From the NCBI GenBank assembly GCA_012026655.1, contig JAAILG010000098.1, forward strand, positions 62,001 through 126,000: a stretch of 64,000 nucleotides of DNA, written 5' to 3'. Shown here in pieces: positions 27,064 to 59,960 of the stretch. The stretch's first letter is position 1, and each line of letters begins with the position of its first letter. The notes beneath the pieces were generated by a model, which did not search any database, was not told where the DNA came from, and worked only from the letters and a program-made list of their open reading frames with translations. The position numbers and the translations under genes are program-made. The stretch is from Hydrolagus affinis (lineage: Eukaryota).

Positions 27064-27267
<204 letters not shown>

Positions 27268-29414: not shown

Positions 29415-29423
29415 TGATCTATT
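29415..29423 (+). CDS. KCNMA1: KCNMA1 site-2 9-nt IYF microexon
   Basis: Sequence ctgcacactgatag|TGATCTATT|gtgagt. C+TG ATC TAT T+TT reads L-I-Y-F; when joined to STREX it reads LIYS. TGCATG at 29502. Confidence 0.9.
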
Positions 29424-32635: not shown

Positions 32636-32809
32636 CCAAGATCTCCATCTACAAGAGAATGAAACTCGCATGTTGTTTTGATTGCGGAGGCTGTGAGCGT
32701 GACTGCGCTTGCATGTCAGGCAGTGTACATAGTAACATGGACACCCTTGAGAGAACCTTCCCACTTTCTTCTGTCTCTGTTAATGATTGCTCCACCAGTT
32801 TACGTGCCT
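32636..32809 (+). CDS. KCNMA1: KCNMA1 STREX exon (174 nt, 58 aa): (P)KISIYKRMKLACCFDCGGCERDCACMSGSVHSNMDTLERTFPLSSVSVNDCSTSLRA(F)
   Basis: Acceptor tatag, donor gtaagt at 32810; phase 1 to 1; length and cysteine-rich sequence match STREX. Confidence 0.97.
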
Positions 32810-34400: not shown

Positions 34401-34569
34401 TGTCTCCAGAGAATTCAGTGAGCTGGGACACTAGCCTGCGTGAAGGTTGCTATTCAAATGCAATTCGTTGTAGTTGTATGATACATGTATTGTGATATTT
34501 TTCCAGGCTGAATGTTTCTGAGTATTCAAATCAAACAGTTTAACAATTCATCATCTAAATCTCTGATGC

Positions 34570-34990
34570 CAGCATTCTTGTCCACATCAATCTGCCCTCT
34601 TGTCTGCACAATCCAGTTCTTGCCAGTCTCTACTAGCAGATCATGGAAGATTGATTTGAAGGTCCTCATCCACACCTACAATGGCACCTTTTTAATCTCT
34701 CTGACCCTCTCCTACCATACTCCTCCACTAGCCCTTGCAACTTGTCTAATTTGGTCTTATTCCACCCTCTCTGCCATCATCTGTGGCAGAGCCTTTGCTT
34801 CCTATGCCCCTAAAGCTCTGAAACTCCTTCCTTTATCAATCCTCCCTTTCTACCTTGCCGCAAACCCTACTCTTCAAATGCAGCTATTGGCGGACTGCCC
34901 TCCCACTTCCCACTCTCTCTTCTCCCTCTCCCATGTGTCAGACGTTATCCTATGTGAAGGGCATGATATAAATCCAGGTTGTTTTTGTTA
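34570..34990 (+). mobile_element. Degenerate L2-type LINE 3' fragment
   Basis: Translates to KIDLKVLIHTY...ICGRAFASYAP (remnant of the L2 ORF2 C-terminus), followed by the tail motif. Confidence 0.65.
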
Positions 34991-37900
34991 TGAGGAAGCA
35001 TGAGTGTTTACTGCAGCTTAGTTTGTCTCTGAATCTACACAGCATATGGAAATTCCAATTGGTACAAAGCAGTAATGTGCAAAGGCAGAAGCACACGTTT
35101 AACTGTGTGTGACAGGAACTGTATCCAGATCCTTAAATAGCATGAGCCCCGGTATAAACAGATATGGTATTACTTAGTATTTCTTTACTTAAACGTAAGT
35201 TGTGATATTTGTTGAGAAGTCTACAAAGTGCAAATCGTTTTTTAAACTTTTACTTTCTTTTTAAGATCAATGCACACACCTATTCTGCCTTCAATTGTAA
35301 TGATTCATTTGACTTGGGTTCCAATCCAAATAAGACAAAAAGTTTATCTCTCCTGTCAGATTGGTAGTTCGAAATTGTAAATCACATACAGTAGAAATCC
35401 AAAAAGAAGCATAAAACGATTCAGAGCCTGTTTAACTGAAATATTTTTCCCCCATCAAAGAACAGTGAGTGGCAAGATTCCGATTTTCATTAAATTAATA
35501 TGAGCAGATGTGAAATGTTGACTATTTGACAATTAGAAATGGCAGCAGTGGGGGTTGAATCAAAGAGAGGTCAGATGTAGAGATCACATTTCCTTTCTTA
35601 CATTCTTCAGCTGCTCTAACAATCAGATTGAATTAATGTCAGTTCAGCTATGATGATTTTTGCCCTTTGTCTTTTACTGTGGTACTAGATTGCTTCCCTA
35701 GATACTCATTAAAGGTCATTATATCATTACTTGGCTTGGTTTCGGTGTGGACCCCAGTAAGGTTAGCACACTTCATGGTTTTGTTAGACAATTTTCTTTC
35801 ATTACAACACACGTTTTTGATATTTCAGTGTGATCGCATAACCCATTCCATGAATTGTCACAAGCAATAGCAGTAACTACCTCTGACTTTTTCTGGCCAT
35901 CTTGCAAGCGCAGACTGCATTTCAAAGGGATTTCAGAGAATCCACAAACTGAAATCCAGACTTTCACTTGTACGGTACCAAAGACAGACTTTGTTTCTTG
36001 AACTAAATCCAAGGCTCACTGCCCTTGATTGTAGCTCATAATATTTAATTTGCAGTAGACCAAATAACACAGGGAAAAGCCACAATTGAAGCAAGCATTT
36101 GAAACACTTTTTCGTAGTATTTTCTCCCTTGTAAAATGCACAGGACAAGCATACACCTCAAGCAAACCTGTATTTTGTTTTGGTTTCCAGTAAGTGACAT
36201 CTGTTTCAGGGTCATTTCGAGCATGTATTTACAGCAAATACAATCACATATTTTAGTGACATTTGAAGAAAAGCTCAGATGCTTACATTGCGATCCTTGT
36301 CCAGTGGTTTTGTCCACAGAACTGTTGACATGACACAGAAGCAGCTGCAAGGTGATATTACCACAGACAAACTAGTAGTCAAACTGTAGGGAGGTGGGGT
36401 GTGGGGTGGGGTACATGGACAAAGAGCAGTGATTGGTGAGGGTACAAGGAGATAAATTACTGATTAGAAACTGCTGACTCTACAAGTTGCTTTGAGTAAA
36501 TAAGCATTATAAATTGGTGGATTGACATGCCATGTCACATAATGGTAAACATAGGGATTTGTTCCCATTATTTCCTCTCTCACCTCCCACCCCGTGAACC
36601 TAATCAAAGCTGAGGCCTTGGGAGAGGTACAGAAAGTAGGGATGGGCAAGGATATCACCCATGGCTGTTCTCACACTGTTGATTCTAAAGCAGCATTGAC
36701 AGAGGCCTGGGAGCAGCTAGGCTGTCTGCAGCCTTAGCCAGGAATGGTATGAAACAGCGGGGAGACCTGGAGAGGACAGAAAAATGACTTGAAACTGTGG
36801 AATTGAATGAAAAAACAAGGGCCATAAATCTACACATAACTTGATGCAGTGTCTGGCACTTTATGGATACACAACAATAGGAACAGGAAGAAAGTATTCA
36901 GCCCATTGGGCCTATTATTTCAGTTTGTTAGATGCCTTTTTCCCCAACTTTGCTCCTTTCCAGCGCCTTAGGAAATCCTCCTGACGTGAAAGGCGCTATA
37001 CAAGTGTAATTTTGTTGTTGTTGTTTCCCCTTCAGGCAAGGAGGGGAGGAGGGTGGCTTGAGGTGGAGGCAGTTTCAAGACAGGCACATAGATTAAACGG
37101 TTCATGTTGAGTAAACCTGCTACCTGGCATTGTACTTGGACCTCTGGAACATCAAGGTGGCTGGCACATCACAGTTGTCCTCTGGGTCCTCCCACCACAT
37201 TGAAGGAGGATAGCCATCAGATAGCTTACAAGGAGCCTCTGAGGCTTCGGACAACAGCTGTTAGAAGATATTAGCCATAGTCCAGGTTCATAAACACACA
37301 TACAGGGCTTGGTATCCACTTTGATTGATGTGCAGAGAGTGAGCAGTTGCTGCTTAGCTTATGAATATCCTTTGAACTGACAGAACTATCATTCAATGGT
37401 TGGTTGTGGGGGAGTCAATACTATAGGCAGGCAGTATTACTCCCCATTGAGAGTGCACATTTCATTCCAGACACTGGGAAATTTCCTCATGCCTGCGGCA
37501 TACATATGTAGAATACTCAGATCTGTTTTGTATACAATTAACCACAGTGACGTTACAGACGTTCAGCTGACCAAAAGAAAAACTTGTTTCTTTAACGCAT
37601 TCAATTGTTTGGTGGGGGGAAGGGCATTCCACTGTTGCTGTTAAGTGAGTGACCAGGGTCTTGAGTTGGGGGAGAGAGCAGTAGGGGACAAACATCTTCA
37701 CCCGACTCTTCTCAACATCTTGTAGTGAAAGCTGGTAGTAGATTTCCTATCCACTTGTCATCTCAGTCATGGCTGACATTTGGTTCAGCAGGGTTATATA
37801 ACGCGGAGGTAGAAAGTACTTTAGTTTTTGAAAGAGTGAAAAGGAAATGCTGCAATCTTCAGGAAACTCCCCAAATCTGGAATTTTAAGAATGGTAAATC

Positions 37901-43943: not shown

Positions 43944-43976
43944 CAAAGTATAACTATAACGGATTTATCACCTCAA
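43944..43976 (+). CDS. KCNMA1: Putative site-2 33-nt cassette exon: (P/S)KYNYNGFITS(I)
   Basis: Sequence ttttctttccgttgtcttcag|CAAAGTATAACTATAACGGATTTATCACCTCAA|gtaagt; phase 1 to 1, no stop; TGCATG at 43880 and a YCAY cluster downstream. Confidence 0.75.
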
Positions 43977-46085: not shown

Positions 46086-48135
46086 GACCTGGTCATTTAC
46101 CACTTTATCTGGTATTGTTTTGAACCTTGATTTCTAATTACAATGTTGGTGGGTATCAAGCAGTCTGTTTTGAATATTGGATGAATTTCACAGACAGCAG
46201 GTGGTGCTACAACTTAAGGAATAAACTGTGACTGAGATCACATACAAAATGCACATATAGACATGATAGCAAGTTTATTTCCTTATTCTCTTGTTTATTT
46301 TCCCCAAGTATTTCACAGCCCTACAGCCATTGCAAATGTTCCAATTCAAATCAATTAAATAAACTGCAGACAGATCTAACCTCTCTTATTTTTCTTTGTA
46401 AGTCTGTAAAGTTTTACAACACCCAAGGAGGCCACCTTGAGCTTAAACTAACTCCCCACTGCTGGAGCTATCTGCTCACAGCCCATTGCCATTGCTCTCC
46501 CCCCTCCCCCCATACATAGACCTTTTGTTTTGTTTCTCCTCTAGTATTTATCCAACTCCCTTTTAAATGTTGCAGTGGAATCGTCTTTCAACAGCTATTT
46601 GGGGAAAGCCATTCATATTGTAACAATCAAGCAAACATTTTCTTCTCATCTCCTTACCCCATGCTCCCTTACTCCCCACCTTTTTTTTCATCTCGTGAAA
46701 AAAATTAAATTTCTGAAGCTTATCCTCTGTTTTAGAGTTTTTAGATGGAATCTGATATTATCCTGTAACCAAAGTTGCAATTCCAATTTATAGTGTTAGT
46801 GCTTATGGCGGAAGTGTAACTTGTGCCTCTGTAACATTAGGGAAGACGGTCTGTTGTTTGTGCTTTTGGCTAATGTAGTGTTCAGTAGTGGAGTTGCTAG
46901 CAATGCTTTAGCACGTGTTGCTTTACCAGCCACCGAACAAAGGCCCTTAAACTCTCAAGTTAACCAGGCTAGAGAATATAAATAATCAGGTTCAAGGAAC
47001 GCCACGTTTTTGTGGATGAAACACATATTTTTCTTTTTGTATCTGATCTTTCAAATTGCCAACCAGTCTTTACATAACTGATAAGAAATGCGCGGCAAGC
47101 TCATCATCTGCTTCGTTTCGCGCAAACAGACAGCAGCCGTCTTGATCATTCTGGATCCTCCGTGAAACTGCCACACTGCGTATTCTCAAACTAATGCTGT
47201 ATATGTTTGACAACGCACAGATGAATCCAGGAGTTATCGGTGCGGGGGTTTGAATCTAAGCGGCAGCTGACGTTAGAATCAGCCTCCATGTATAGCTCTA
47301 AGCTAGTTCGGGGAAGCTGTGCTGCTGTGGTATGAAGGATTTTTAAAAAATGCCTTCAGTAATGTGTGGAAGAGAAATATTTTTCACGAAAAAAAGCCAT
47401 TGGCCTGCATTAAAATTGAAATGAGCTTCATAAGTAATTCTGAAAATTTGTGACACTTTGTGATCATTTAACTAAGATCCAAAATAATGACTGCATTAAT
47501 TAAAACCCATCCAATTACCTGAGATTAGCTATTAAAAACTGAAGTATCAAATGTGGAGTTATATATCTTCGAGCTGTTTGCTTCAGAAATCTAGTCTGCC
47601 TCAAGTATTTGATGTGAATTTTATACGTCTTTCAAAATCGAAATTGCAAAGACTTTTTTCCATAGGAAATCATAAATAATGCAATGGCAGTAATGCAATA
47701 TTTATTTTTAACAAGTTAATTCATGGGGAGATGCTTGTGATTATTCATGGGGCGATGTTTATGTCATTAGATGCGATTAAAGATGTTTGCTCTGAATATT
47801 TATATTTATTATTGTGCATGTCTCCCATGCCTCTCTAAAGTTTAAATTAATCACACTTCTGGTTCAAATTATTTCATACCATTTATGGGGCATTGTTTAT
47901 TACGATTTAGTGTTACTGCACTTACTGTTGAAACTTGGATATTGGTTGCTTGTACTCTGTGGTCTGACCATGTTATCAAACTGTTGGCGAATATGGGAAA
48001 ATCTCCTTAAAATTTGGCATCAATATGATCTGAGATTGGTGTCACCTGTCACTAATACCAATAGTTTGACAGATAAGATGCATTTTCTTTATAAATGTCA
48101 TAATCCTGGGTCCATGGGCTTGGTCAAGTATTAGC

Positions 48136-48232
48136 GTGTGTATGTATGCATGTGTGTCTACATGTGCTGTGTGTATACACATCCGCATGAATGTATATGT
48201 GTGTGAATATGTGTGTGTGTATATGTATGTGC
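48136..48232. repeat. Imperfect (TG/TA)n microsatellite
   Basis: gtgtgtatgtatgcatgtgtgtc...gtgtgtgtgtatatgtatgt. Confidence 0.7.
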
Positions 48233-48759
48233 AGTGGAGGAAGGACTAAACTGATATCATACCTCTAAATATTGACATAAAGTATTGAAGGTAAATTAAC
48301 TGACTTTAAAGCCTGTCAAATTAGGTCTTTGACCATTACAGTTAATGTCTCTCTCATGTTGGCATCAGTGCCTTCTGCTCCGGAGATATTTGGCTTGCAA
48401 TGTTGTGTTGTCGCCAGCGGAAACTTGACATCCTTCTCTGTCCTGCAGTATTTGTAACTCAGTACTTGATTGATTTCTCAGGAAAGGATATACAGTACTT
48501 AGGTTAAGGGCTTATTATTGAAAGAACAAGTTTGTAAAATATTGTTCCGAGTAATGCACGAAATACTGAAGAGTCATGGTGTGGGTATGGGTGGGAGGGT
48601 CTGAGAGATGTCCCATTTGTCTCCTCCCCAAACTGCAATCTGGGTGCTGCTCAGTTACATGCTTTGCAGGAAGAAAGGGGAAGATTATTTGTCTTGCTCT
48701 CAACATCACAATGTTTGCAACTGAGCACCATGACATGTGGAGAACAAGGTTGCCTCGGT

Positions 48760-49085
48760 GATCAAATGTGATCTTGTTTTGATGGTGTAAGGCGGAGGGG
48801 CTCCAGGATACAGATCCGGAGGGTGGGGGCAGAAAGGTCAAAGGCTCAACCACCAATAGTGGAGCAGATAGAGTGGATGTGGAGCAGATGGGTACCTGCC
48901 AAGTGGGGGAGCGGATAGTTGGCAAAGATTTAGTGGGTCACAGAGGTTTACCCCACCAGCGAAGCCAGGAGAGAATGGGGGTGATCGACTCACGGAGTTA
49001 AGATAGGAACTTACAAACAGGGATACAAGGAGGCAGGTCAGCAGCCCAGTGACATTATTCCAGGTGACTCCTTTCAGGTGGGTCA
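48760..49085 (-). mobile_element. Degenerate L2-type LINE 3' fragment
   Basis: Reverse strand ctattggtggttgagcctttgacctttctgcccccaccctccgg is a decayed IGGRAFS.SAP.LWN motif. Confidence 0.55.
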
Positions 49086-49728
49086 AGAGTGACGTCACCT
49101 ATAAAGGAGATCTCCTGCCTGCCTTCCTTGAAGATGGTGGGACTCACAGAAGAAATATTTTTATATTAAGTGTTTTTTTATTTTTGCTGGAATCCAATTG
49201 GCCAAATTTATTTGATTGATTTATGCCTTAATGATTGATACCAATGATGGAAACTAGTCATTTGCACTATGATACATTATTGTGCAAATGGTTAAAAAAA
49301 AGTGTAATGATAGTCACAGGAGAAGGTGATGGAGATAATGAGTGTGTGACATTATACGGTAAGTATTCATGCACACTGGGTCTGGCGGTGCTGATGCTAT
49401 CCAGATTGTGAACTGTAACAGCAAGTAAATAGAGGCCTGGCGCACCGTACGCTTGTTCTTCCATTCCCCAACTTGTCATCGCGTTACCCCACCTTAAAGG
49501 TTACAACTGAGATCAGACCTGGGTATTGATTCATCTTGCTGACGTTTGGCATTCTATGTTTTCCACATCTGTTTTGCACTGACAATTTAACTGCAATGGG
49601 TATTTTTTTTTCTGTTGTTACAGAAATTAAACAAAAATGCCCATTTTTGCCAACAATAACATTGTGAAAATGCAAATGCCTCGTTGTGCTTTGTTTCTTA
49701 ATGTGTCCACTTTTTTTTTACTTGGCAG

Positions 49729-50016
49729 TAAAGGATGAAGCTGAACCAGGTTTGCTAAATGACTCACTTAAAGCCCGCTCCACCAAGTCCCACACATTGT
49801 CAAATGCTGTACCTATTACAGAAGGCCCTGAAGCCGTGCAGCTTGTTAATAACCGTAAAGGAAGCCTCTACTTGTCCAGTGACTCTTCACTCAGGCGCCT
49901 AAGTCTGCTGAATACAAGTGATCAAGGAAGAGGTGCCCAGTGTAGGTTACAGCGTGCACGCAGCTTGCCTGTGAAATACAGATACCACCCCAACAACGCT
50001 ACATGCGACGATCTCT
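49729..50016 (+). CDS. KCNMA1: Putative site-2 288-nt (96-codon) cassette exon: KDEAEPGLLNDSLKARSTKSH...NRKGSLYLSSDSSLRRLSLL...RLQRARSLPVKYRYHPNNATCDDL(F)
   Basis: Acceptor ttttttttacttggcag, donor t|gtaggt at 50017; phase 1 to 1; open frame inside ORF 49686..50168; hydrophilic linker-like composition; TGCATG at 50062. Confidence 0.75.
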
Positions 50017-50504
50017 GTAGGTTTCCCCTCGACTGCACTTGTCAGCCAGTGCAGATACATATGCATGAAATTCTAGCTTTGGGTGTTTTTATTTTGTTCC
50101 TCCCAAAAACCCAAATCTGCCAAGTGATGATAAGACAATGGGGCCCTCCAGATGTGATCCTTTTCTGATCTGGTGTGAACTCAACCTCTGCTCAATAGCA
50201 ACCTAGACATGGGGGAGATGGGGGGTTGGGGATTGGGGGGATAAGCAGTTGGAAGAAGGGGGAATTATGATCTTACATAAATAAATAAAATTTCCTGGTT
50301 AGTACAAAAAAATCTTCATTATAAGAACTGCCATTTTCTGAGTTTATTCCCATGTAAACTTCATTGTGTTTTGAAGTTTAAGTGAGAAAATAGTTGCGTT
50401 ACAATCGCTGCAGTTTTGTTGTGTTGACGTAACATATTGTTGAGCAGAAATTTCAGGATCCCCAAAAAAACAGAAGCAAAGTTATATCATATCTAATCTA
50501 ATTC

Positions 50505-50663
50505 GTCACTAATGATTGTCGGCCTGTGCCTTCCTGTGCAATTGGCTGCTGGGTTTCACCCACAAAATACATAATCACTACACTTTACAGTACGTACTGT
50601 GAAGCGCTTTGGGACATCTTGAAGATATAATAAAGCGCTATATCAAATGCAAAGATTATTATT
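50505..50663 (+). mobile_element. SINE 3' portion
   Basis: gtgcaattggctgctgggtttcacccacaaaatac...gtgaagcgctttgggacatcttgaaga...aaagcgctatatcaaatgcaaagattattatt. Confidence 0.8.
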
Positions 50664-53121
50664 TAGAACTCTTTCTATTTACTGTATGTAAATATCTGTT
50701 GCTGTAGATTCTAACCCACCATTGTACATGTCACTCTGTGTACATTATTCAGAGGGTACAACCTCAAAGTTTGAAGAAGCAATGCACTGTCCCAGTACAA
50801 TGATACCGAAAAGCATAGACAAATCTCTTAGCAACTAGGAAATAAAGAACAAAATGACATTACAAATGAGGATTGAAAACAGCTTGAGTTTTTTTTTGCA
50901 ATAATATATTACACCTTTAAAGGAAAAGAATACGTCTTTCCCAGGTTTTGTGGATCACTCTCTCGGGGAATCATGTCATCTTATCACTTGCCAGTAATAA
51001 CAGTTTGAAGTTTGACTAAACATCTTCCAGAAAATGATTGAGAATTCCCGTGCCAGAACTTTTCTTTTAACTTTCAAACCAGACAACATCCCAGTCCGCC
51101 CATATTAAACAACCCTTGAAATTATTTTCTTTCCAGCTACAAGTCTGGCCGTGGCTCGAGTCTTTTGTAGGCAGACACACTTTAGGAGTTTTTTTTTAAA
51201 AAAGAAATATTTTTTATAAACTAATCTCTTTACTAATTCCATACTAGACAATATAGCCAATTACACACAGAAAGTGCTGGCAGATGTCATTACTAACAGA
51301 TTAAAAGTAACAGTGAAATGCAACTTAAATGATCAAGCTGGATATTTGAGTTGTGTCTAAGCAAAACTTGCACAGTTAAAATAATTCAGTCCACTTCAAT
51401 GGAGGAGCTTTTTTTTGCTCTTTTGTCATGTGCCATTCTTTGATTCAGCCTCGTAGCTATATACACACTCACACACATATACACCTACAACATTCATTTT
51501 GGGAGCCTGAACTAGTTTCAGTTTGGCATGCCTTCCTGAGAGCTCAAAAGGGTTAGCAGAGTATATGGGAGCAGGGAAATGTGTAGTAAGCAAACTCCAG
51601 ACAGTAACCTTGTACAGTACCAAGTTATTTTCTTTTGCAATTCTGTATTTCCATTTATTTCTTTGCCAGTGATGGACCATCCTTCCTGACAATTACTTGA
51701 GGCATTGTTTTTATATTCTCTCTATCAGCTCTCCTCTCATTACTCAATTCTAACTATTTTGTTTCGCTCAGATTGTTGTACAGTACCAATATATGTGGCT
51801 ACTCTCTGTAGGATAGTTGAAATTGTGAAAAAACAATTGAAAAAAAAACATCCTTTATTTCTTGATGTACACAAAGATGTATATGTGTATTTGTGGGCCT
51901 GTTTTTCCACAAGAATATACAGTGTCTCCATTTTACGATATAACTTTTATAACTCCATCCCGACCCCAACTCGGATCCGAAACACTGACTATCCATGAAA
52001 GGCGTTATACAAATGTAATTTTGTTGTTGTTGTTGAAGCACTTTGAGATGTCCTCCCATCTTGCAAGGTTCTAAATCGAATACAAGGATCATTATTATTT
52101 TATCATTATTGATCCCAAAAGCCCTTTATTTGAAGGACTCAGGAAATATTTTATCCCTTCAGTAAATTCATGAATGCAGTCTGACTTTTCATGAATTTTT
52201 CTGAACCATGTCGTAAGCAAGGTTTCGGCTGAATTTAACAAGATATCCAAATCTCTTATTCAGTTAATGTAAACCTTGAACTGAATGACAGATGAGATAT
52301 ACAGAAACAATGTGGTGTGGATTTAAAATCTTTGGAGTGTTAAAATGTGGCTAATGTAGACAACTTGAATTAATAGTGTCTTCTTAATGGATTAAATCCT
52401 TGGGTTACACTTTGCCTGGCTTTTTAACGGGCAACTGCACTGTCATTCTTTGAAAGGCTGGAGATTACACTTGGTAGGATTTTCTCACACACTTGTTTGT
52501 TTTGCTCAATCCTGCAAATTCCTTCATAGTTCCTGTAGTCACTGCTGGTTTAACATTGAAGGCTGTGAGCCGGAAACAGTGCGTTAATGCTGCACGCTCT
52601 AGAGTGACACCTTCTTTAACCCGAGTGGTTTGATTTCTACTTAAAAAGAATTGTCGTATTTTAGATATTTAACCTGCACAAGTCTTCAATTTTGTTATTT
52701 ACGCTTTCTGAATGGGGCAGTTGGTTCCTTCACCCTCAACCACCCAAATTGAAACTGTGTGCCTTCCCTGTGAGTCCTGTTTTGATAAACATTGTTTTCA
52801 ACTTTCTTTTAATTGATATCATGTGTGTGTATGTGTGTGTTTAGTGTTTTGCAATATTGAGTGCTAGATTACCTTAGTCACGCCTTTAGGATTTTGAACT
52901 GGTTTGTTTTTGATTAATACGTTAGACCGTACTTAGTCCTCATTTGATTTGATTTTCTTTTCCCCGAGTAACCCGTTCATTGCTATATAGTGGAGATCTT
53001 TAACTTTCATAATGAGTCACTTTCTGTTTAAATATGCATTTTTAAAAAAAAATGTTTAATTTCCATTTCGGGCATACTTCTGAAAATGGCTCCTAAACTC
53101 ACATCTTCCGTATGTTTGCAG

Positions 53122-53221
53122 TTGCGGTTGAAGATCAACATCCATCAACACTGTCACCCAAAAAAAAGCAGCGCAATGGAGGCATGCGAAATTCACCCAA
53201 CGGTTCACCCAAATTGATGAG
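53122..53221 (+). CDS. KCNMA1: KCNMA1 constitutive exon after site 2 (100 nt): (L)[32 protein letters not shown](R)
   Basis: Acceptor tatgtttgcag, donor gtaaga at 53222; phase 1 to 2; 6 nt longer at the 5' end than the form beginning LEDEQP. Confidence 0.95.
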
Positions 53222-55404
53222 GTAAGAAAAGACAGCTAAAGAACTCTCTGTCTGAAGAGAAAGGGAGCGAGCGAGAAAAATCCTTAAAGGCTGAAGTATT
53301 TATTCTGTCAGGCTGTCAGCGGTTAATGATAGAGCTGAAAAATTTCTGTCATGAAAGAGGGTAGGCAAAGCTGTTAGAGAGAATGCAGGCTTTAAACTCT
53401 CAGCTGTCACCTCAGTCTGTCCACATGTATTTCTTAAACAGCAATGGCACTAATGACAGCGGTAACCAATCAGAGAGACTCATACGGTTACCTTCCCTCA
53501 GGCTATTCCCTGTGTCTACGAGTCCCTTGGAGTACTGTTTTCTGTACTTGAGGCCATATGTGAGATGTATCGTAACAATGAAAAATGAACCCAAATTTTT
53601 ACATTCCTTTTATCTTGTCCATTTGCATTAAATTGTCGTTAATTGATTTTGACTCCGAGGAGAGAGAAAGGGCGCGGGAGTGGGAGGAAGCTAAATAATT
53701 GGCAGGTTCGGTAACGGGAAGTTTACGAGCTGGTGATGAGTGAGGGGAGCACTTGATTGCTGCCATGTCACGGGTTAACCTGCACTCGGTGTTTGACAAG
53801 TAAACAGCTTCATCCACTTAGCATATGAAACAATCATACAAGAAAATTGCTTGGGGTTTACAGAAGCTCCAAACCTTATTTTTTGCAGAACAGAAGGTCC
53901 CTGTTTACCATGTAAAATATGCACCAACCTCTTTTGATCTCTACACAGTAATAATTCCGAGGAGTGGGTTGAACTCTTATGGTGCGCTTCAAAGCTGTGC
54001 CGAACTTTTGCCGCTGTAGGGTAATCCTTTATATTAGTGGCCCTCGGGTGGCTGAATGACAGGTCTCCTGTGCTAGGTGGAGCTTTCTCAAGTTGTAGCC
54101 TTCAGCAAAATGTGGAATTACTGAACAGAGAATCACCCGGGCTTTCAGAAATCCGTTTCCCGCAGATATATCATACCTTAAATATTACATATTTTGGAAT
54201 TACAAGGTACATTTTATGGGCAATGTGAAGTGCTGGTTTAAAGCAGCCTAAGGGGTTCTTATTGCACAAGGTGAAAAAAAATGGTATATATTGTATCAAA
54301 TATGGTTTTTACAGGCAGATATGCCTCAAGGTCTTTGTAAATAAGTAATGATCAACAGTTTGGATGTGGGTTTTGAAAAGCATGCCTTTGTCAGTTTGCA
54401 TGATGGGAGCTCAACATTTCAAAGAGCAGCTTGCTTTCATTGCCTGGCGAAGTGGGACTGAGGGAGAATAGTCATCCCTGCTAGTGCTGTCTAGTCAGCA
54501 TCAAATTGGAATTGCTAAACGCAGCTTGAACACCAAGCGCAGAACTGTTTGAGCCTTCAATATAACAAGTTCTAACGAGTGCCAGCCCAACATTCTTTAC
54601 ATGAAATTAACACCCTTCTGATGGATTGCAGAAGGTCATCGGATACCCCGTTCTAATTGTAGTCTGCGAATGTTAGGTCTATTAATCATAACGCATTTGT
54701 TCAGATCCATCAGAACAGAGCATTACGGTGAAACAAATGTCGCAGTTATTCCCTGTGAGTAGCAGCGTTCAGCAGAGTTTGCCAGTGACAGGCGGTGATG
54801 AGTGACAGTTTGTGAAAGATAGCTATCTTGGTGGAGCTTTACAGCGCCAGTCAAGGCAGTCAGAAAAGATTGAAGTGACAGAGGTCCATTGAGTGAATGT
54901 TGAAACACACAGAGCATCATGAAATATTCAGCCGCGTTGTAAAATCACTAAATGCTTTCTCACTTATTAGCACCTGTACTGACTGCGTACATCGAGACGA
55001 CTGAGATGTTAATGGACAAATGTTTTGTCATGATGATTGCGAAGGGCTGAGCGAGTGTGGAATTTGAAGGGAAATGAACATGAGGTTTTAGAAGGAATAA
55101 TTTCCTTGGAAAATGGAAGGTTTGGGACAGTCAGATTGATGAATAAAACACCAATCCCCGGTTACATGGCCCGGTGGGCTTTGTGGTTTTGCTCCTGGCT
55201 GTCGCTTGTCAGGCAGCACGGGTTGCTGTACACTTGTAATGCATTAACCACAATTTTTGCCCTCGCTGCTGCTCGCAGATTTGATGATACTGGTTTGCAT
55301 TCTCCCCCTCGGCGATGTCATCCGCAGATGTGTGGTCAACTTCCATATGTAGATGGATGACACCCAGATCCGCTGATCTTCTGTCAACTTGTTTGACAGA
55401 CATT

Positions 55405-57367: not shown

Positions 57368-59960
57368 GTGGGTATCATGAAGAGGCAGTGATCAGTGACA
57401 TTGGGTGGCACAGAGTGACACGACTCCCCAATTACTAGTAACGGACGTTTTACTTAGTGGGAGCTGACAACCACATACACTGAACTTCTCACCGTCTCGT
57501 AAGAACAAAACTGACGTGTTGTTTTACAAACTGCCACGAACAGCCCTGAACCTCGTTAGTGTTCACCGCCTTCTGACCTAACCCTTTGTTTACTGATTTA
57601 CAGTGACTCATGTCCTCCTTTGAAGGAACGGATTTAGTTTGACCAGGATCAGTTGTGTTCCTCACAAATGGTGCCCTCTGCGCACTGGGAAAGTGTGAGC
57701 GAGTTGTGTCGGCAGGGTTTCAGCCTGCTGAAAAGGTTGAAGCCATGCAAATACAATTAGAGCTGCAAATTTGTTAAATAATTGCTATCAAACCAGCAAT
57801 CCCAGGTCTTTTTCTGCGTTTCAGTGCGGTGTTTATCAGCGGCCGGCCCAGACAAACCACATTGCATTCATTGATTGCATAAATGCCACTTCTCATTTGT
57901 AAAATCACTGCACTGATTTGCAGCAAAGTGGCAGTCTTGGTTTGAAATCCATGCTAACCTGCACAATCTCTATTGGAGAGCTGCTTCCTTCAAAGAGACA
58001 TGGTTCAAAGCCTGTTTTGATGGGCAGTCCGAATATAAAGACAAATAACAACAGTCACAGGTTAATGGCATACGACACGCAAGATGTGCTCTGAAACCAC
58101 CTTGTGTTTCCCCCGATCGTGGGAACTAAACGCACGTGCATATGGACAAGTGGATTATGGTCAGCGTAACGAGATGACATCAGTTGCAATGTGCTGTATT
58201 ACAATGACCATCTGTCATATGTGATTCAGTGACATAAGGCTATTTTACAGTGGGCAAGGGCATGGAGGGTTAGAGTCAAGCTGTCAATGCGCCTGGTCCT
58301 CTCCTCACTGATGTTGAAGTGCACCCAGTTTCCAGAAGGTATCATTTTATTGTGATCAGGAGCTGGAACCCTGGCTGCTTTCATTTGCCCTTCCTTGCAT
58401 TGAGCCGCTTTTAGCTCCTTCACCCCAACCGAGATCAGGGAGTGGCTCATGAGAAGCATAAACATCATTACGGACGTGTTGGGCTGAACAGCCCATTTCG
58501 ATGTCTCATCACTCCTTAGCTCCAGGTGCACATTTTCTGCCTGGGTTCGGGTCATTGGATGGTGATGGCAGGAGCCTTGTGTTTTTCCCTCTCTCCATAA
58601 TCCAGAGAGATTGTGGCGAATTATAATGGCCTGCACTGCCTCCACATCTGAGATTAGCTCACTCAACACACGTAGTGGATTCAATTTGGAACCTTCTTGC
58701 TCTTTTTGATTTAATACCACATTTGCATTTACCCATTGAGAAGATTTGCTCGTCCTTTTTTTGAGTCAGCAGAATTGAAAGGGTTTAAAGAGGCACAAAG
58801 ACACACGCACAGTAAGCGCCTTTTGTAGATAATTCTCTGTATCTCTGTAGATAATTCTTCACCATTTATTTCCTCATTGTTTTGTGGCAGATGCAGCACA
58901 TTATTTTAGATCCTTTTATTTACGCCTCGCAATTAGCCTGTTGGCATTTACATAACAAGAAAGTTACGTGGGTTAAACCATGTTCCGGGTGACTGTTTGC
59001 TGATTTATGCAGAGATGATTTTTAATAATTTTGCATTTAGCTTTTGTGTTATTCTTTGTCATAAATTTTCCTTGCATTTTGTTTGGAAAGGTGCAGTTCC
59101 TGGGGTTTCTGACACACTGTCCCACCTATCTTGCTGTTGCATTTCATTTCAAGTTAAAATGATTTTGCTCTGTTAAGTAATTTGGTGGGGATGGTGGTGG
59201 TGGAGGGGGCAGTATCTCTGGAAATTGAGGATTGGACCCAGTGCCTGGAAAGCACGAAGGGTTGGATCCAATCATTTTACCTGACTTTTGAACTCTGCCC
59301 AGTGGACAAGGTGTCCACTTTGAAGTAGGTAGTCAACAAGAAGACAAATCAGGAAAGCAGCTTGATTCCTTATGAGGACAAAAGTTACCATTGTGGCCAG
59401 ATACAGGAAGTGCTGCGGAGCTTTGGGCAGAGTCTGACTCCAGTTTTGTACAACCACGGAACTCTTCTAGTGAAGTATACCATCAACCATCCAGTGATGG
59501 CACATTTACTGCAGGAACTGGGAGAACCGTGGATGGTTGTGTTTGCCAATCTAGTGTTATTGCACTGTGTGATAAATCTCCTGATCCCATTGGAAGTGTA
59601 GCTAACTCCTCCAATTTTATACACATGAAATCAAAAATACCAGGTACATTTATGATACCAGTCAGATTTCCATCAGTATGCTCATATAGCAATGATTGCC
59701 ATTGAAAAGTGATAGAAAAGCATTATCCCACATGCTATTCAGTATGATAGGACTATTAGAGGTGAAAGGGTACATCAAACAGTGGGTGTATGGATGCTTA
59801 CTGTTTCACTTCTTTCCTAACTTCCTGTGTAAAATCAAGTCTTCAAGCAGTATGTACAGGTAATTTTTCTACTGTGGCTTTGTGTATACTGGGCAAACTT
59901 ATGTGAATGAATGTGCATTTATATATTGGTTTTAATTCTGATCTTTTGTTTATGCTGTAG

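What the first reader, a model, noticed from the sequence alone, without database searches (positions are those of the whole stretch)
49729..50016. Large 96-codon cassette exon in the BK RCK1-RCK2 linker, rich in kinase and 14-3-3 motifs
Seen: a strong acceptor, a gtaggt donor, 288 nt, phase 1 to 1 like STREX, an uninterrupted frame and a TGCATG about 45 nt downstream. The peptide has RKGS and RRLS (PKA consensus R-R/K-x-S) and LQRARSLP (CaMKII L-x-R-x-x-S overlapping a 14-3-3 mode-1 R-x-x-S-x-P). Known: it is not among the classical mammalian site-2 inserts (IYF, STREX, 29-aa e22). Inference: an alternative phospho-regulatory module for BK. It may correspond to long inserts I recall from amphibian Slo (96+3=99 aa with IYF) or to predicted isoforms; I cannot verify either, so novelty is uncertain.
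Basis: partly seen in the sequence, partly recalled or inferred. Interest (0 to 1): 0.85.

Follow-up and report, generated by a model that had tools for sequence, protein, structure and literature searches.

The report
Ancient BK channel linker cassette exon
This is the cartilaginous-fish copy of an old optional exon of the BK potassium-channel gene, already predicted in birds, turtles and bony fishes, which adds a floppy segment with two strictly conserved phosphorylation-type motifs that the paper searches did not find described.

Summary
Window 49729-50016 is a 288-nt, phase 1-1 open exon with a strong acceptor and a gtaggt donor. It lies in KCNMA1 between the ...KKCGCKR exon and the ...[14 protein letters not shown] exon.

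It is not a chance ORF. The peptide matches the same insert, at the same splice site, in predicted KCNMA1 isoforms of gar, bichirs, sturgeon, paddlefish, many teleosts, 101 bird rows (chicken included) and a turtle. Identity is 48-53%.

Two blocks are nearly invariant: LVNNRKGSL and L-x-R-A-x-S-L-P-V-K-Y-R-Y-H. Spacers vary in length. The second block fits a basophilic-kinase site and a 14-3-3 mode-1 motif. RRLS is not conserved, and the downstream TGCATG is no more than chance.

The insert is predicted disordered, with no Pfam or PDB match.

Inclusion in this species is not shown. The runs laid were genomic DNA, or an RNA run that did not cover the exon.

Novelty is low: it is the orthologue of a database-annotated exon whose function I did not find described. 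No cartilaginous-fish protein model with it appeared in the listed rows. The scan had not noted this exon before. Function as a phospho/14-3-3 module is inference.

The parts
27186..27262 (+). Upstream constitutive KCNMA1 exon (...[25 protein letters not shown] + 1 base), the splice donor for all site-2/C2 inserts
   Evidence: read directly; same KKCGCKR junction as in the database proteins
29415..29423 (+). 9-nt IYF mini-exon (context only)
   Evidence: tag|TGATCTATT|gtgagt, which reads L-I-Y-(F) in phase 1
32636..32809 (+). STREX-type 174-nt exon (context only)
43944..43976 (+). 33-nt mini-exon KYNYNGFITS (context only). Joined to the exon studied here it would read ...FITS-I-KDE, as in the sturgeon and Coilia models
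49704..49728 (+). Polypyrimidine tract and AG acceptor (tgtccactttttttttacttggcag)
   Evidence: Read-through ORFs from other species keep L-A/T-V (..cag|T) in frame at this point
49729..50016 (+). The cassette exon: 288 nt, phase 1-1, encoding (L)KDEAEPG...CDDL(F)
   Evidence: homology
49842..49868 (+). Conserved block 1, LVNNRKGSL (residues 38-46): basophilic R-K-x-S site
   Evidence: V39 N40 N41 R42 K43 G44 are invariant in 26 sequences. An N[NI][RH][KR]G[ST] pattern is present in 235 of 239 held proteins
49944..49988 (+). Conserved block 2, RLQRARSLPVKYRYH (residues 72-86): L(-5)-x-R(-3)-x-x-S-L-P, a 14-3-3 mode-1-like motif, followed by KYRYH
   Evidence: R75 S78 P80 K82 Y83 invariant. R[AV].[ST][LM]P present in 239 of 239. 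The only predicted helix is 68-77
50017..50022 (+). GT donor (gtaggt)
   Evidence: Read-through ORFs show Cys (t|gt) where spliced models show F/L/I/M
50017..50040 (+). Possible 24-nt coding extension (CRFPLDCT) ending at a second donor, t|gtcagc, at 50041
   Evidence: Gar isoforms X2 and X8 carry ...NHSP-CMFPSAGCT-L EDEH. Use in this species is not shown
50062..50067 (+). TGCATG (Rbfox-type hexamer) in the downstream intron
   Evidence: present, but at chance frequency in this window
53122..53221 (+). Downstream constitutive exon ((L/F)[33 protein letters not shown])
   Evidence: read directly; same ...[14 protein letters not shown] junction as in the database proteins

Best explanation
Shown: 49729-50016 is the cartilaginous-fish orthologue of an ancient alternative exon of KCNMA1 (BK/Slo1). 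It sits at the C2 (site-2) splice site in the linker between RCK1 and RCK2. It is spliced in phase 1-1 between the ...KKCGCKR exon and the ...[14 protein letters not shown] exon, and can be combined with IYF, STREX and the KYxYNG mini-exon. The exon predates the split of cartilaginous and bony vertebrates, and it is kept in both teleost paralogues. Inferred: it adds about 96 residues of intrinsically disordered linker that serve as a carrier for two short linear motifs. The first, NNRKGS-L, is a basophilic (PKA/PKG-type) serine. The second, L-x-R-A-x-S-L-P followed by VKYRYH, fits CaMKII/PKD-type kinases and, once phosphorylated, a 14-3-3 mode-1 site. The most likely mechanism is that phosphorylation of S78, and then 14-3-3 docking on the four linkers of a tetramer, changes gating or surface expression of channels that carry the insert. 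This would parallel the way STREX re-wires kinase control at the same site. I put the exon identity at about 0.95 and the phospho/14-3-3 mechanism at about 0.45.
For: Position, phase and splice signals were read directly. An exhaustive phmmer search gave 25 hits at E<=1e-3, and all carry the two blocks. Spliced, named models carry the insert at the identical junctions: Dissostichus KAK1904963.1 and Coregonus; 12 of 460 candidates; 100 of 371 candidates, all named rows being ray-finned fishes, gar included; 207 of 545 candidates, with the 120 listed being 18 ray-finned-fish rows, 101 bird rows and 1 turtle row. The junction strings are KKCGCKR-L-NDD...NHSP-F-EDEH in gar and KKCGCKR-Q-VKNA...QDL-L-EDEQ in chicken. 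The window peptide aligns over residues 1-90 at 53% to tarpon and sturgeon, 52% to gar and 48-49% to chicken. The conservation pattern is that of a protein: there are invariant blocks, and the variable spacers do not break the frame in any sequence compared. R[AV].[ST][LM]P is in 239 of 239 held proteins. The AlphaFold2 model has mean pLDDT 56.5 and pTM 0.20, with one short helix at 68-77. There is no Pfam family on the peptide, and in gar the insert lies after BK_channel_a (518-605), between the RCK halves. There is no PDB match. For STREX, a kinase-switch insert in the same disordered linker, I read passages of PMC4122160.
Against: There is no RNA evidence in this species. The three holders laid (X4, X2, X5) are genomic contigs that run unbroken across both exon borders. 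The one RNA run (X9, single-cell polyA, a different organism code) covered only repeats. The three differences listed in the closest relative (49840, 49989, 49998) all change the amino acid by my codon reading, so purifying selection is not visible at short range; that table was truncated. The -1 Arg of RARS is not conserved (L in birds, C in bichirs), cichlids have RKGC, and RRLS is not conserved. The 239 proteins were chosen by similarity to this exon and include many isoforms per species, so part of the motif 'invariance' comes from how they were selected. No cartilaginous-fish, amphibian or mammalian model appeared in the listed rows, and 87 rows were not shown. No experiment links the insert to kinases or 14-3-3.
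Confidence: 0.8

Rival explanations
1. The exon is real and conserved, but its conserved block acts mainly as a trafficking signal. An arginine-based (R-x-R) retention motif, RAR, would be masked by 14-3-3 or phosphorylation and would control surface delivery rather than gating.
For: RLQRARSLP holds R-x-R directly next to the candidate 14-3-3 serine, and RARS is the commonest form in fishes. That 14-3-3 masks Arg-based signals in other K+ channels is recalled knowledge, not from a call.
Against: The second Arg is L in 94 held bird, turtle and unnamed rows, and C, H or Q in other lineages. An R-x-R signal is therefore not the conserved feature, whereas R(-3), S and P(+2) are (239 of 239).
Confidence: 0.2
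2. The exon is a relic in this lineage. It was inherited from the jawed-vertebrate ancestor but is no longer spliced into mRNA in cartilaginous fishes.
For: No RNA support was obtained. No cartilaginous-fish protein model with the insert is among the rows listed. Skate BK cDNAs were described without site-2 inserts in passages of bioRxiv 10.1101/274449. The three differences listed in the nearest relative are all non-synonymous by my reading.
Against: The frame, both splice sites and every invariant residue are intact after divergence from bony vertebrates. A close relative's ORF is 94/95 identical and also open. The two skate clones came from a single tissue. The word share in organism A (0.30) suggests about 4% divergence in the exon, against about 10% over the 1.56-kb contig around it (155 other letters). 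That estimate is rough.
Confidence: 0.08
3. It is a chance open frame or pseudo-exon, or a conserved non-coding element, not a coding exon.
For: Forty stop-free runs of 96 codons or more exist in the window, and TGCATG is at chance level.
Against: Protein-level homology at E down to 4.7e-15 in a library of 1.84 billion. Identical junctions in about 200 spliced database models. The variable spacers leave the frame open in every sequence compared.
Confidence: 0.02

Closest known systems
Predicted KCNMA1/kcnma1a isoforms carrying the long C2 insert (e.g. Lepisosteus oculatus isoform X1, Gallus gallus isoforms X4/X5/X14/X15, Pelodiscus sinensis X2, Acipenser ruthenus, Polypterus, many teleosts)
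   Same: Same gene, same junctions (KKCGCKR | insert | EDE(H/Q)[14 protein letters not shown]) and same phase. Same invariant blocks, LVNNRKGSL and L.RA.SLPVKYRYH. Same combinations with IYF, STREX and the mini-exon.
   Different: Only 48-53% identical. The window copy is 96 codons, against 98 in chicken and up to about 150 in salmonids. It has RRLS and a C-terminal CDDL. It comes from a cartilaginous fish, a group not seen among the listed database rows.
STREX exon of KCNMA1
   Same: An alternative, phase 1-1 cassette at the same splice site, in the disordered RCK1-RCK2 linker. It adds a kinase consensus site that changes regulation (passages of PMC4122160).
   Different: No sequence similarity. 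STREX is a separate exon in this very window (32636-32809). STREX works through a palmitoylated CCFDC cysteine cluster and a polybasic patch, and this exon has neither.
Xenopus xSlo alternative exons (Kukuljan et al. 2003, J Neurophysiol 90:3352; only the reference-list entry was seen)
   Same: As recalled, not verified: a long insert named xSlo99 at a single xSlo splice site. Chicken has 99 residues between KKCGCKR and EDEQ, so the number would fit this exon.
   Different: The paper is not held and no held paper contains 'xSlo99' or 'xSlo59'. Identity with this exon is unverified.
Drosophila dSlo-Slob-14-3-3 complex
   Same: 14-3-3 regulates a Slo-family BK channel (passages of PMC3032372).
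   Different: In flies 14-3-3 reaches the channel indirectly, through Slob. Here the candidate site is in the channel's own optional exon, and binding is untested.

Membership tests
Long C2/site-2 cassette exon of vertebrate KCNMA1 (gar/chicken type) | Lies between the ...KKCGCKR exon and the ...[14 protein letters not shown] exon of KCNMA1 | tested here: met
   for the window; for the database models
Long C2/site-2 cassette exon of vertebrate KCNMA1 (gar/chicken type) | Phase 1-1, length a multiple of 3, open frame | tested here: met
   288 nt; only one frame is open
Long C2/site-2 cassette exon of vertebrate KCNMA1 (gar/chicken type) | Invariant blocks LVNNRKGSL and L.RA.SLPVKYRYH in this order | tested here: met
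   both blocks are present unchanged in the window peptide
Long C2/site-2 cassette exon of vertebrate KCNMA1 (gar/chicken type) | Significant full-length similarity to annotated members | tested here: met
   Residues 1-90 align at 52-53% to tarpon, sturgeon and gar (E about 1e-20 in a small local database). E is 4.7e-15 to the chicken-type ORF in the 1.84-billion library
Long C2/site-2 cassette exon of vertebrate KCNMA1 (gar/chicken type) | Actually included in, and skipped from, mRNA (alternative use) | tested here: inconclusive
   One search found no spliced joints, but the holders were genomic DNA and the one RNA run did not cover the exon. Skate cDNAs without site-2 inserts are described in 10.1101/274449
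STREX | Cysteine-rich CCFDCGRSERDC core with a polybasic patch upstream | tested here: not met
   The peptide has no such motif. STREX is a different exon at 32636-32809
14-3-3 mode-1 binding site | R-x-x-pS/pT-x-P sequence | tested here: met
   RARSLP in the window; R[AV].[ST][LM]P in 239 of 239 held homologues. The motif definition is recalled
14-3-3 mode-1 binding site | Phosphorylation-dependent binding of 14-3-3 | not testable with these tools
   Needs pull-down or ITC with the phospho-peptide
Basophilic (PKA/PKG, CaMKII/PKD) kinase substrate | R at -3 (and K/R at -2, or hydrophobic at -5 and +1) relative to Ser | tested here: met
   R42-K43-G44-S45-L46 and L73-x-R75-x-x-S78-L79. The consensus definitions are recalled. 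Phosphorylation itself is not testable here

The most novel reading that the evidence does not exclude
BK channels of the jawed-vertebrate ancestor already had an optional linker module whose only strictly conserved content is a kinase-gated 14-3-3 docking site, L-x-R-x-x-S-L-P-V-K-Y-R-Y-H. This would give the vertebrate channel a direct 14-3-3 switch, which flies achieve indirectly through Slob. The module would persist from sharks to birds and be absent or unrecognisable in mammals, which would explain why BK physiology, built on mammalian clones, has not studied it.
Probability: 0.3. Interest if true: 0.6.

Novelty: new member of a known kind. Interest (0 to 1): 0.35.

Why it matters
BK splice variants at this site set how the channel responds to kinases, and thereby the excitability of neurons, muscle and hair cells. 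This exon is as old as jawed vertebrates, and it keeps two phospho-motifs unchanged while everything around them drifts, which argues for a real regulatory role. It appears in automated gene models. I found no paper describing its sequence motifs among 8.4 million full texts. Placing an intact copy in a cartilaginous fish dates the exon and points to S45 and S78 as the residues to mutate. It does not reveal a new kind of system.

Tried and rejected
1. RNA evidence. The look-up of sequencing runs listed 8 holders, none on record as RNA. Read laying on 47400-53399 with X4, X2, X5 and X9 showed flat genomic contigs across the exon borders. There were no joints at 49729 or 50016, and X9 had depth only on repeats. 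The result is uninformative rather than negative.

2. Chance ORF. Rejected on homology, not on ORF length.

3. TGCATG as a splicing signal. It is present but at chance level. I could not test its conservation because no DNA of other species could be fetched.

I used read-through ORF residues as an indirect proxy instead.

5. Literature.
- 'xSlo', 'splice variants', 'Xenopus': 3 papers, none describing the insert.
- 'xSlo99' / 'xSlo59': 0 papers.
- Motif strings: 0 papers.
- Skate BK preprint 10.1101/274449: passages only, no mention of this exon.
- Chick cochlea paper PMC8456117: passages only. It reports three additional KCNMA1 splicing events whose identity is in Supplementary Table S4, which I could not open.
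- Kukuljan 2003 and Miranda-Rottmann 2010 (PMC2897565) are not held. Fodor & Aldrich 2009 has no PMC id in the reference list seen.
- Searches gave nothing on this exon.

6. Pfam, PDB and the ESM Atlas gave nothing on the peptide.

7. Structure. The model was of low confidence, so I ran no fold search.

8. Mammals, amphibians and other cartilaginous fishes. Absence is not established.

Full report
Observation. The window carries the site-2 (C2) splice region of KCNMA1 on the + strand.
- The constitutive exon ...[25 protein letters not shown] ends at 27262 and leaves one base over.
- A 9-nt IYF exon ends at 29423.
- A STREX-type exon is at 32636-32809.
- A 33-nt KYNYNGFITS mini-exon is at 43944-43976.
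- The next constitutive exon, (L)[32 protein letters not shown], starts at 53122.

The reported feature lies between them. It has a 25-nt pyrimidine-rich tract ending in cag, then 288 nt (49729-50016), then gtaggt. Only one frame is open. In phase 1 it reads (L)KDEAEPG...NNRKGSLYLSSDSSLRRLSLL...RLQRARSLPVKYRYHPNNATCDDL(F). Exon GC is 0.49, against about 0.37-0.43 in the 2-kb bins around it.

Chance. An open frame of this length is not rare here: there are 40 stop-free runs of 96 codons or more in the six frames, although the run holding this exon (166 codons) is the second longest. TGCATG is not enriched (47 found, 60 expected). The case therefore rests on homology.

Homology. I searched the exon alone. 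I did not build or search a joined model of the window's exons.

An exhaustive phmmer search of the 95-residue peptide against 1.84 billion representatives gave 25 proteins at E<=1e-3. One is a 99%-identical ORF from a close relative. One (E 4.7e-15) is identical to the chicken exon. Two are named, spliced models: Dissostichus eleginoides KAK1904963.1 and Coregonus CAB1343840.1.

I then used whole database proteins with the region option:
- A toothfish query found 12 of 460 candidates.
- A croaker query found 100 of 371, all named rows being ray-finned fishes, among them many 'kcnma1a isoform X..' models, tarpon and gar.
- A gar query found 207 of 545. The 120 listed were 18 ray-finned-fish rows (gar, two bichirs, tarpon, two sturgeons, paddlefish, a mormyrid, a moray), 101 bird rows including chicken isoforms X4, X5, X14 and X15, and one turtle row.

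In all of them the insert sits at exactly the junctions predicted for the window, for example KKCGCKR-L-NDD...[23 protein letters not shown] in gar and KKCGCKR-Q-VKNA...NQDL-L-EDEQPST... in chicken. The window peptide aligns over residues 1-90 with 53% identity to tarpon and sturgeon, 52% to gar and 48-49% to chicken. Among 196 full-length models holding the exon, it occurs alone (150), or combined with IYF, STREX and/or the mini-exon (46).

Earlier notes of this scan place the genome in the cartilaginous fishes (NAR-TCR loci, 'probable cartilaginous fish'). I did not test that myself. If it holds, the exon predates the split between cartilaginous and bony vertebrates.

Anatomy of conservation. 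Alignments show two blocks in a sea of variable, length-variable sequence. They are L38-VNNRKG-S45-L46 and R72-L-x-R75-A-x-S78-L-P80-V-K82-Y83-R-Y-H86. V39, N40, N41, R42, K43, G44, R75, S78, P80, K82 and Y83 are invariant in 26 sequences.
- In the 239 proteins held, R[AV].[ST][LM]P occurs in 239 of 239. One eagle species has Thr for Ser.
- The first site is present in 235 of 239. Three cichlid-type sequences read RKGC, and one Tetraodon model lacks that part.
- These proteins were picked by similarity to the exon and contain many isoforms per species, so the counts overstate independence.
- The residue at -1 of S78 varies (R, L, C, H, Q).
- The RRLS of the window is LRLS in most fishes and is lost in birds.

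Unspliced ORF predictions from other species read L-A/T-V just before the exon, which encodes ..cag|T. They read Cys (t|gt) exactly where spliced models have the split codon F/L/I/M.

Reads. The 6-kb stretch 47400-53399 was laid on four runs.
- X4 (about 98.6% identical: 36 other letters in 2539) and X2/X5 (about 90%) are genomic. Their contigs run unbroken through both exon borders.
- No joint at 49729 or 50016 was listed.
- The only run on record as RNA (X9, single-cell polyA, another organism code) had depth only on repeats at 48800-49000, 50400-50800 and 51800-52200.
- Inclusion in this lineage therefore remains untested.
- The three differences listed for X4 inside the exon (49840, 49989, 49998) all change the amino acid by my reading (Q37R, P87S, A90T), and all lie in variable positions. 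The table was truncated (412 rows not shown).

Structure and families. The peptide has no Pfam family. In gar the insert (674-766) follows BK_channel_a (518-605) and precedes the second RCK half. There is no PDB sequence match and nothing usable in the ESM Atlas. AlphaFold2 with the 26-row alignment gave mean pLDDT 56.5 and pTM 0.20, with one helix at 68-77 over QCRLQRARSL. This fits a disordered linker carrying short linear motifs.

Mechanism (inferred). STREX sits at the same site in the same unstructured linker. It adds a PKA serine that turns PKA from activator to inhibitor (passages of PMC4122160). By analogy, and from what is conserved, I propose that this insert is a carrier for S45 (R-K-x-S) and above all for S78. 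S78 has Leu at -5, Arg at -3, Leu at +1 and Pro at +2. By recalled consensus definitions that fits CaMKII/PKD-type kinases and a 14-3-3 mode-1 site. 14-3-3 is known to regulate fly Slo, but only through Slob (passages of PMC3032372). A trafficking role for an R-x-R signal is a weaker variant, because the second Arg is not conserved.

Novelty. The exon is present in many automated gene models, so it is not new as a sequence feature. I found no description of it in print: its motif strings, 'xSlo99' and 'xSlo59' each returned 0 papers. The papers most likely to describe it (Kukuljan 2003; Miranda-Rottmann 2010; Fodor and Aldrich 2009) are not held, and supplements were closed. No cartilaginous-fish, amphibian or mammalian model appeared in the listed rows, and 87 rows were unseen.

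Verdict. This is a real, ancient, orthologous cassette exon. It is ordinary as a kind, modestly interesting for its untested and strictly conserved motifs, and not shown to be used in this species.

Noticed in passing
window 50017-50046: The frame stays open past the gtaggt donor. It reads CRFPLDCT and then meets a second possible donor, t|gtcagc, at 50041. Gar isoforms X2 and X8 include a similar extension (CMFPSAGCT) before EDEH, and read-through ORFs of several teleosts show C-R-x-x-P-x-AGC-I. This may be a conserved alternative 5' splice site adding 8-9 residues.
   Followed up: partly
window 50400-50800 (also 48800-49000, 51800-52200): A very high-copy repeat. Summed contig depth is 10^5-10^6 in three genomic runs, and there are thousands of RNA reads from a different organism code, with many loose ends at 50535, 50581, 50630 and 50663. 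It is probably a SINE-like element shared across related species. I did not classify it.
   Followed up: no
window 49840: The window has A (Gln37). Three laid runs from two organism codes, and the 99%-identical ORF P0001, have G (Arg), as do no other vertebrate groups at that variable position. It may be an allele or lineage-specific change of the window's source.
   Followed up: partly
window 53122-53130: The downstream constitutive exon starts (L/F)AVEDQH, two residues longer than the LEDE(H/Q) of most vertebrates. It resembles the VAVEEDQQ seen in one model of the second teleost paralogue (P0105).
   Followed up: no
window 43944-43976 with 49729: The mini-exon leaves an 'a', which with the 'ta' of the cassette gives Ile. 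The sturgeon and Coilia models read ...NG(Y)(V/I)(R/K)S-I-K(E/D)(D/E), the same joint. The two exons are therefore used together in annotated fish isoforms.
   Followed up: partly
held proteins P0025, P0069, P0073 and P0168, P0192-P0202: Cichlid-type sequences have RKGC instead of RKGS, so the first serine is lost. Haliaeetus albicilla models have RALTLP, with Thr for the second serine. These are natural variants useful for testing which site matters.
   Followed up: partly
window 58229-58765 (-) and 34512-35000 (+): These are the other two stop-free runs of 160 codons or more in the window (179 and 163 codons). I did not examine them; they may be transposon remnants.
   Followed up: no
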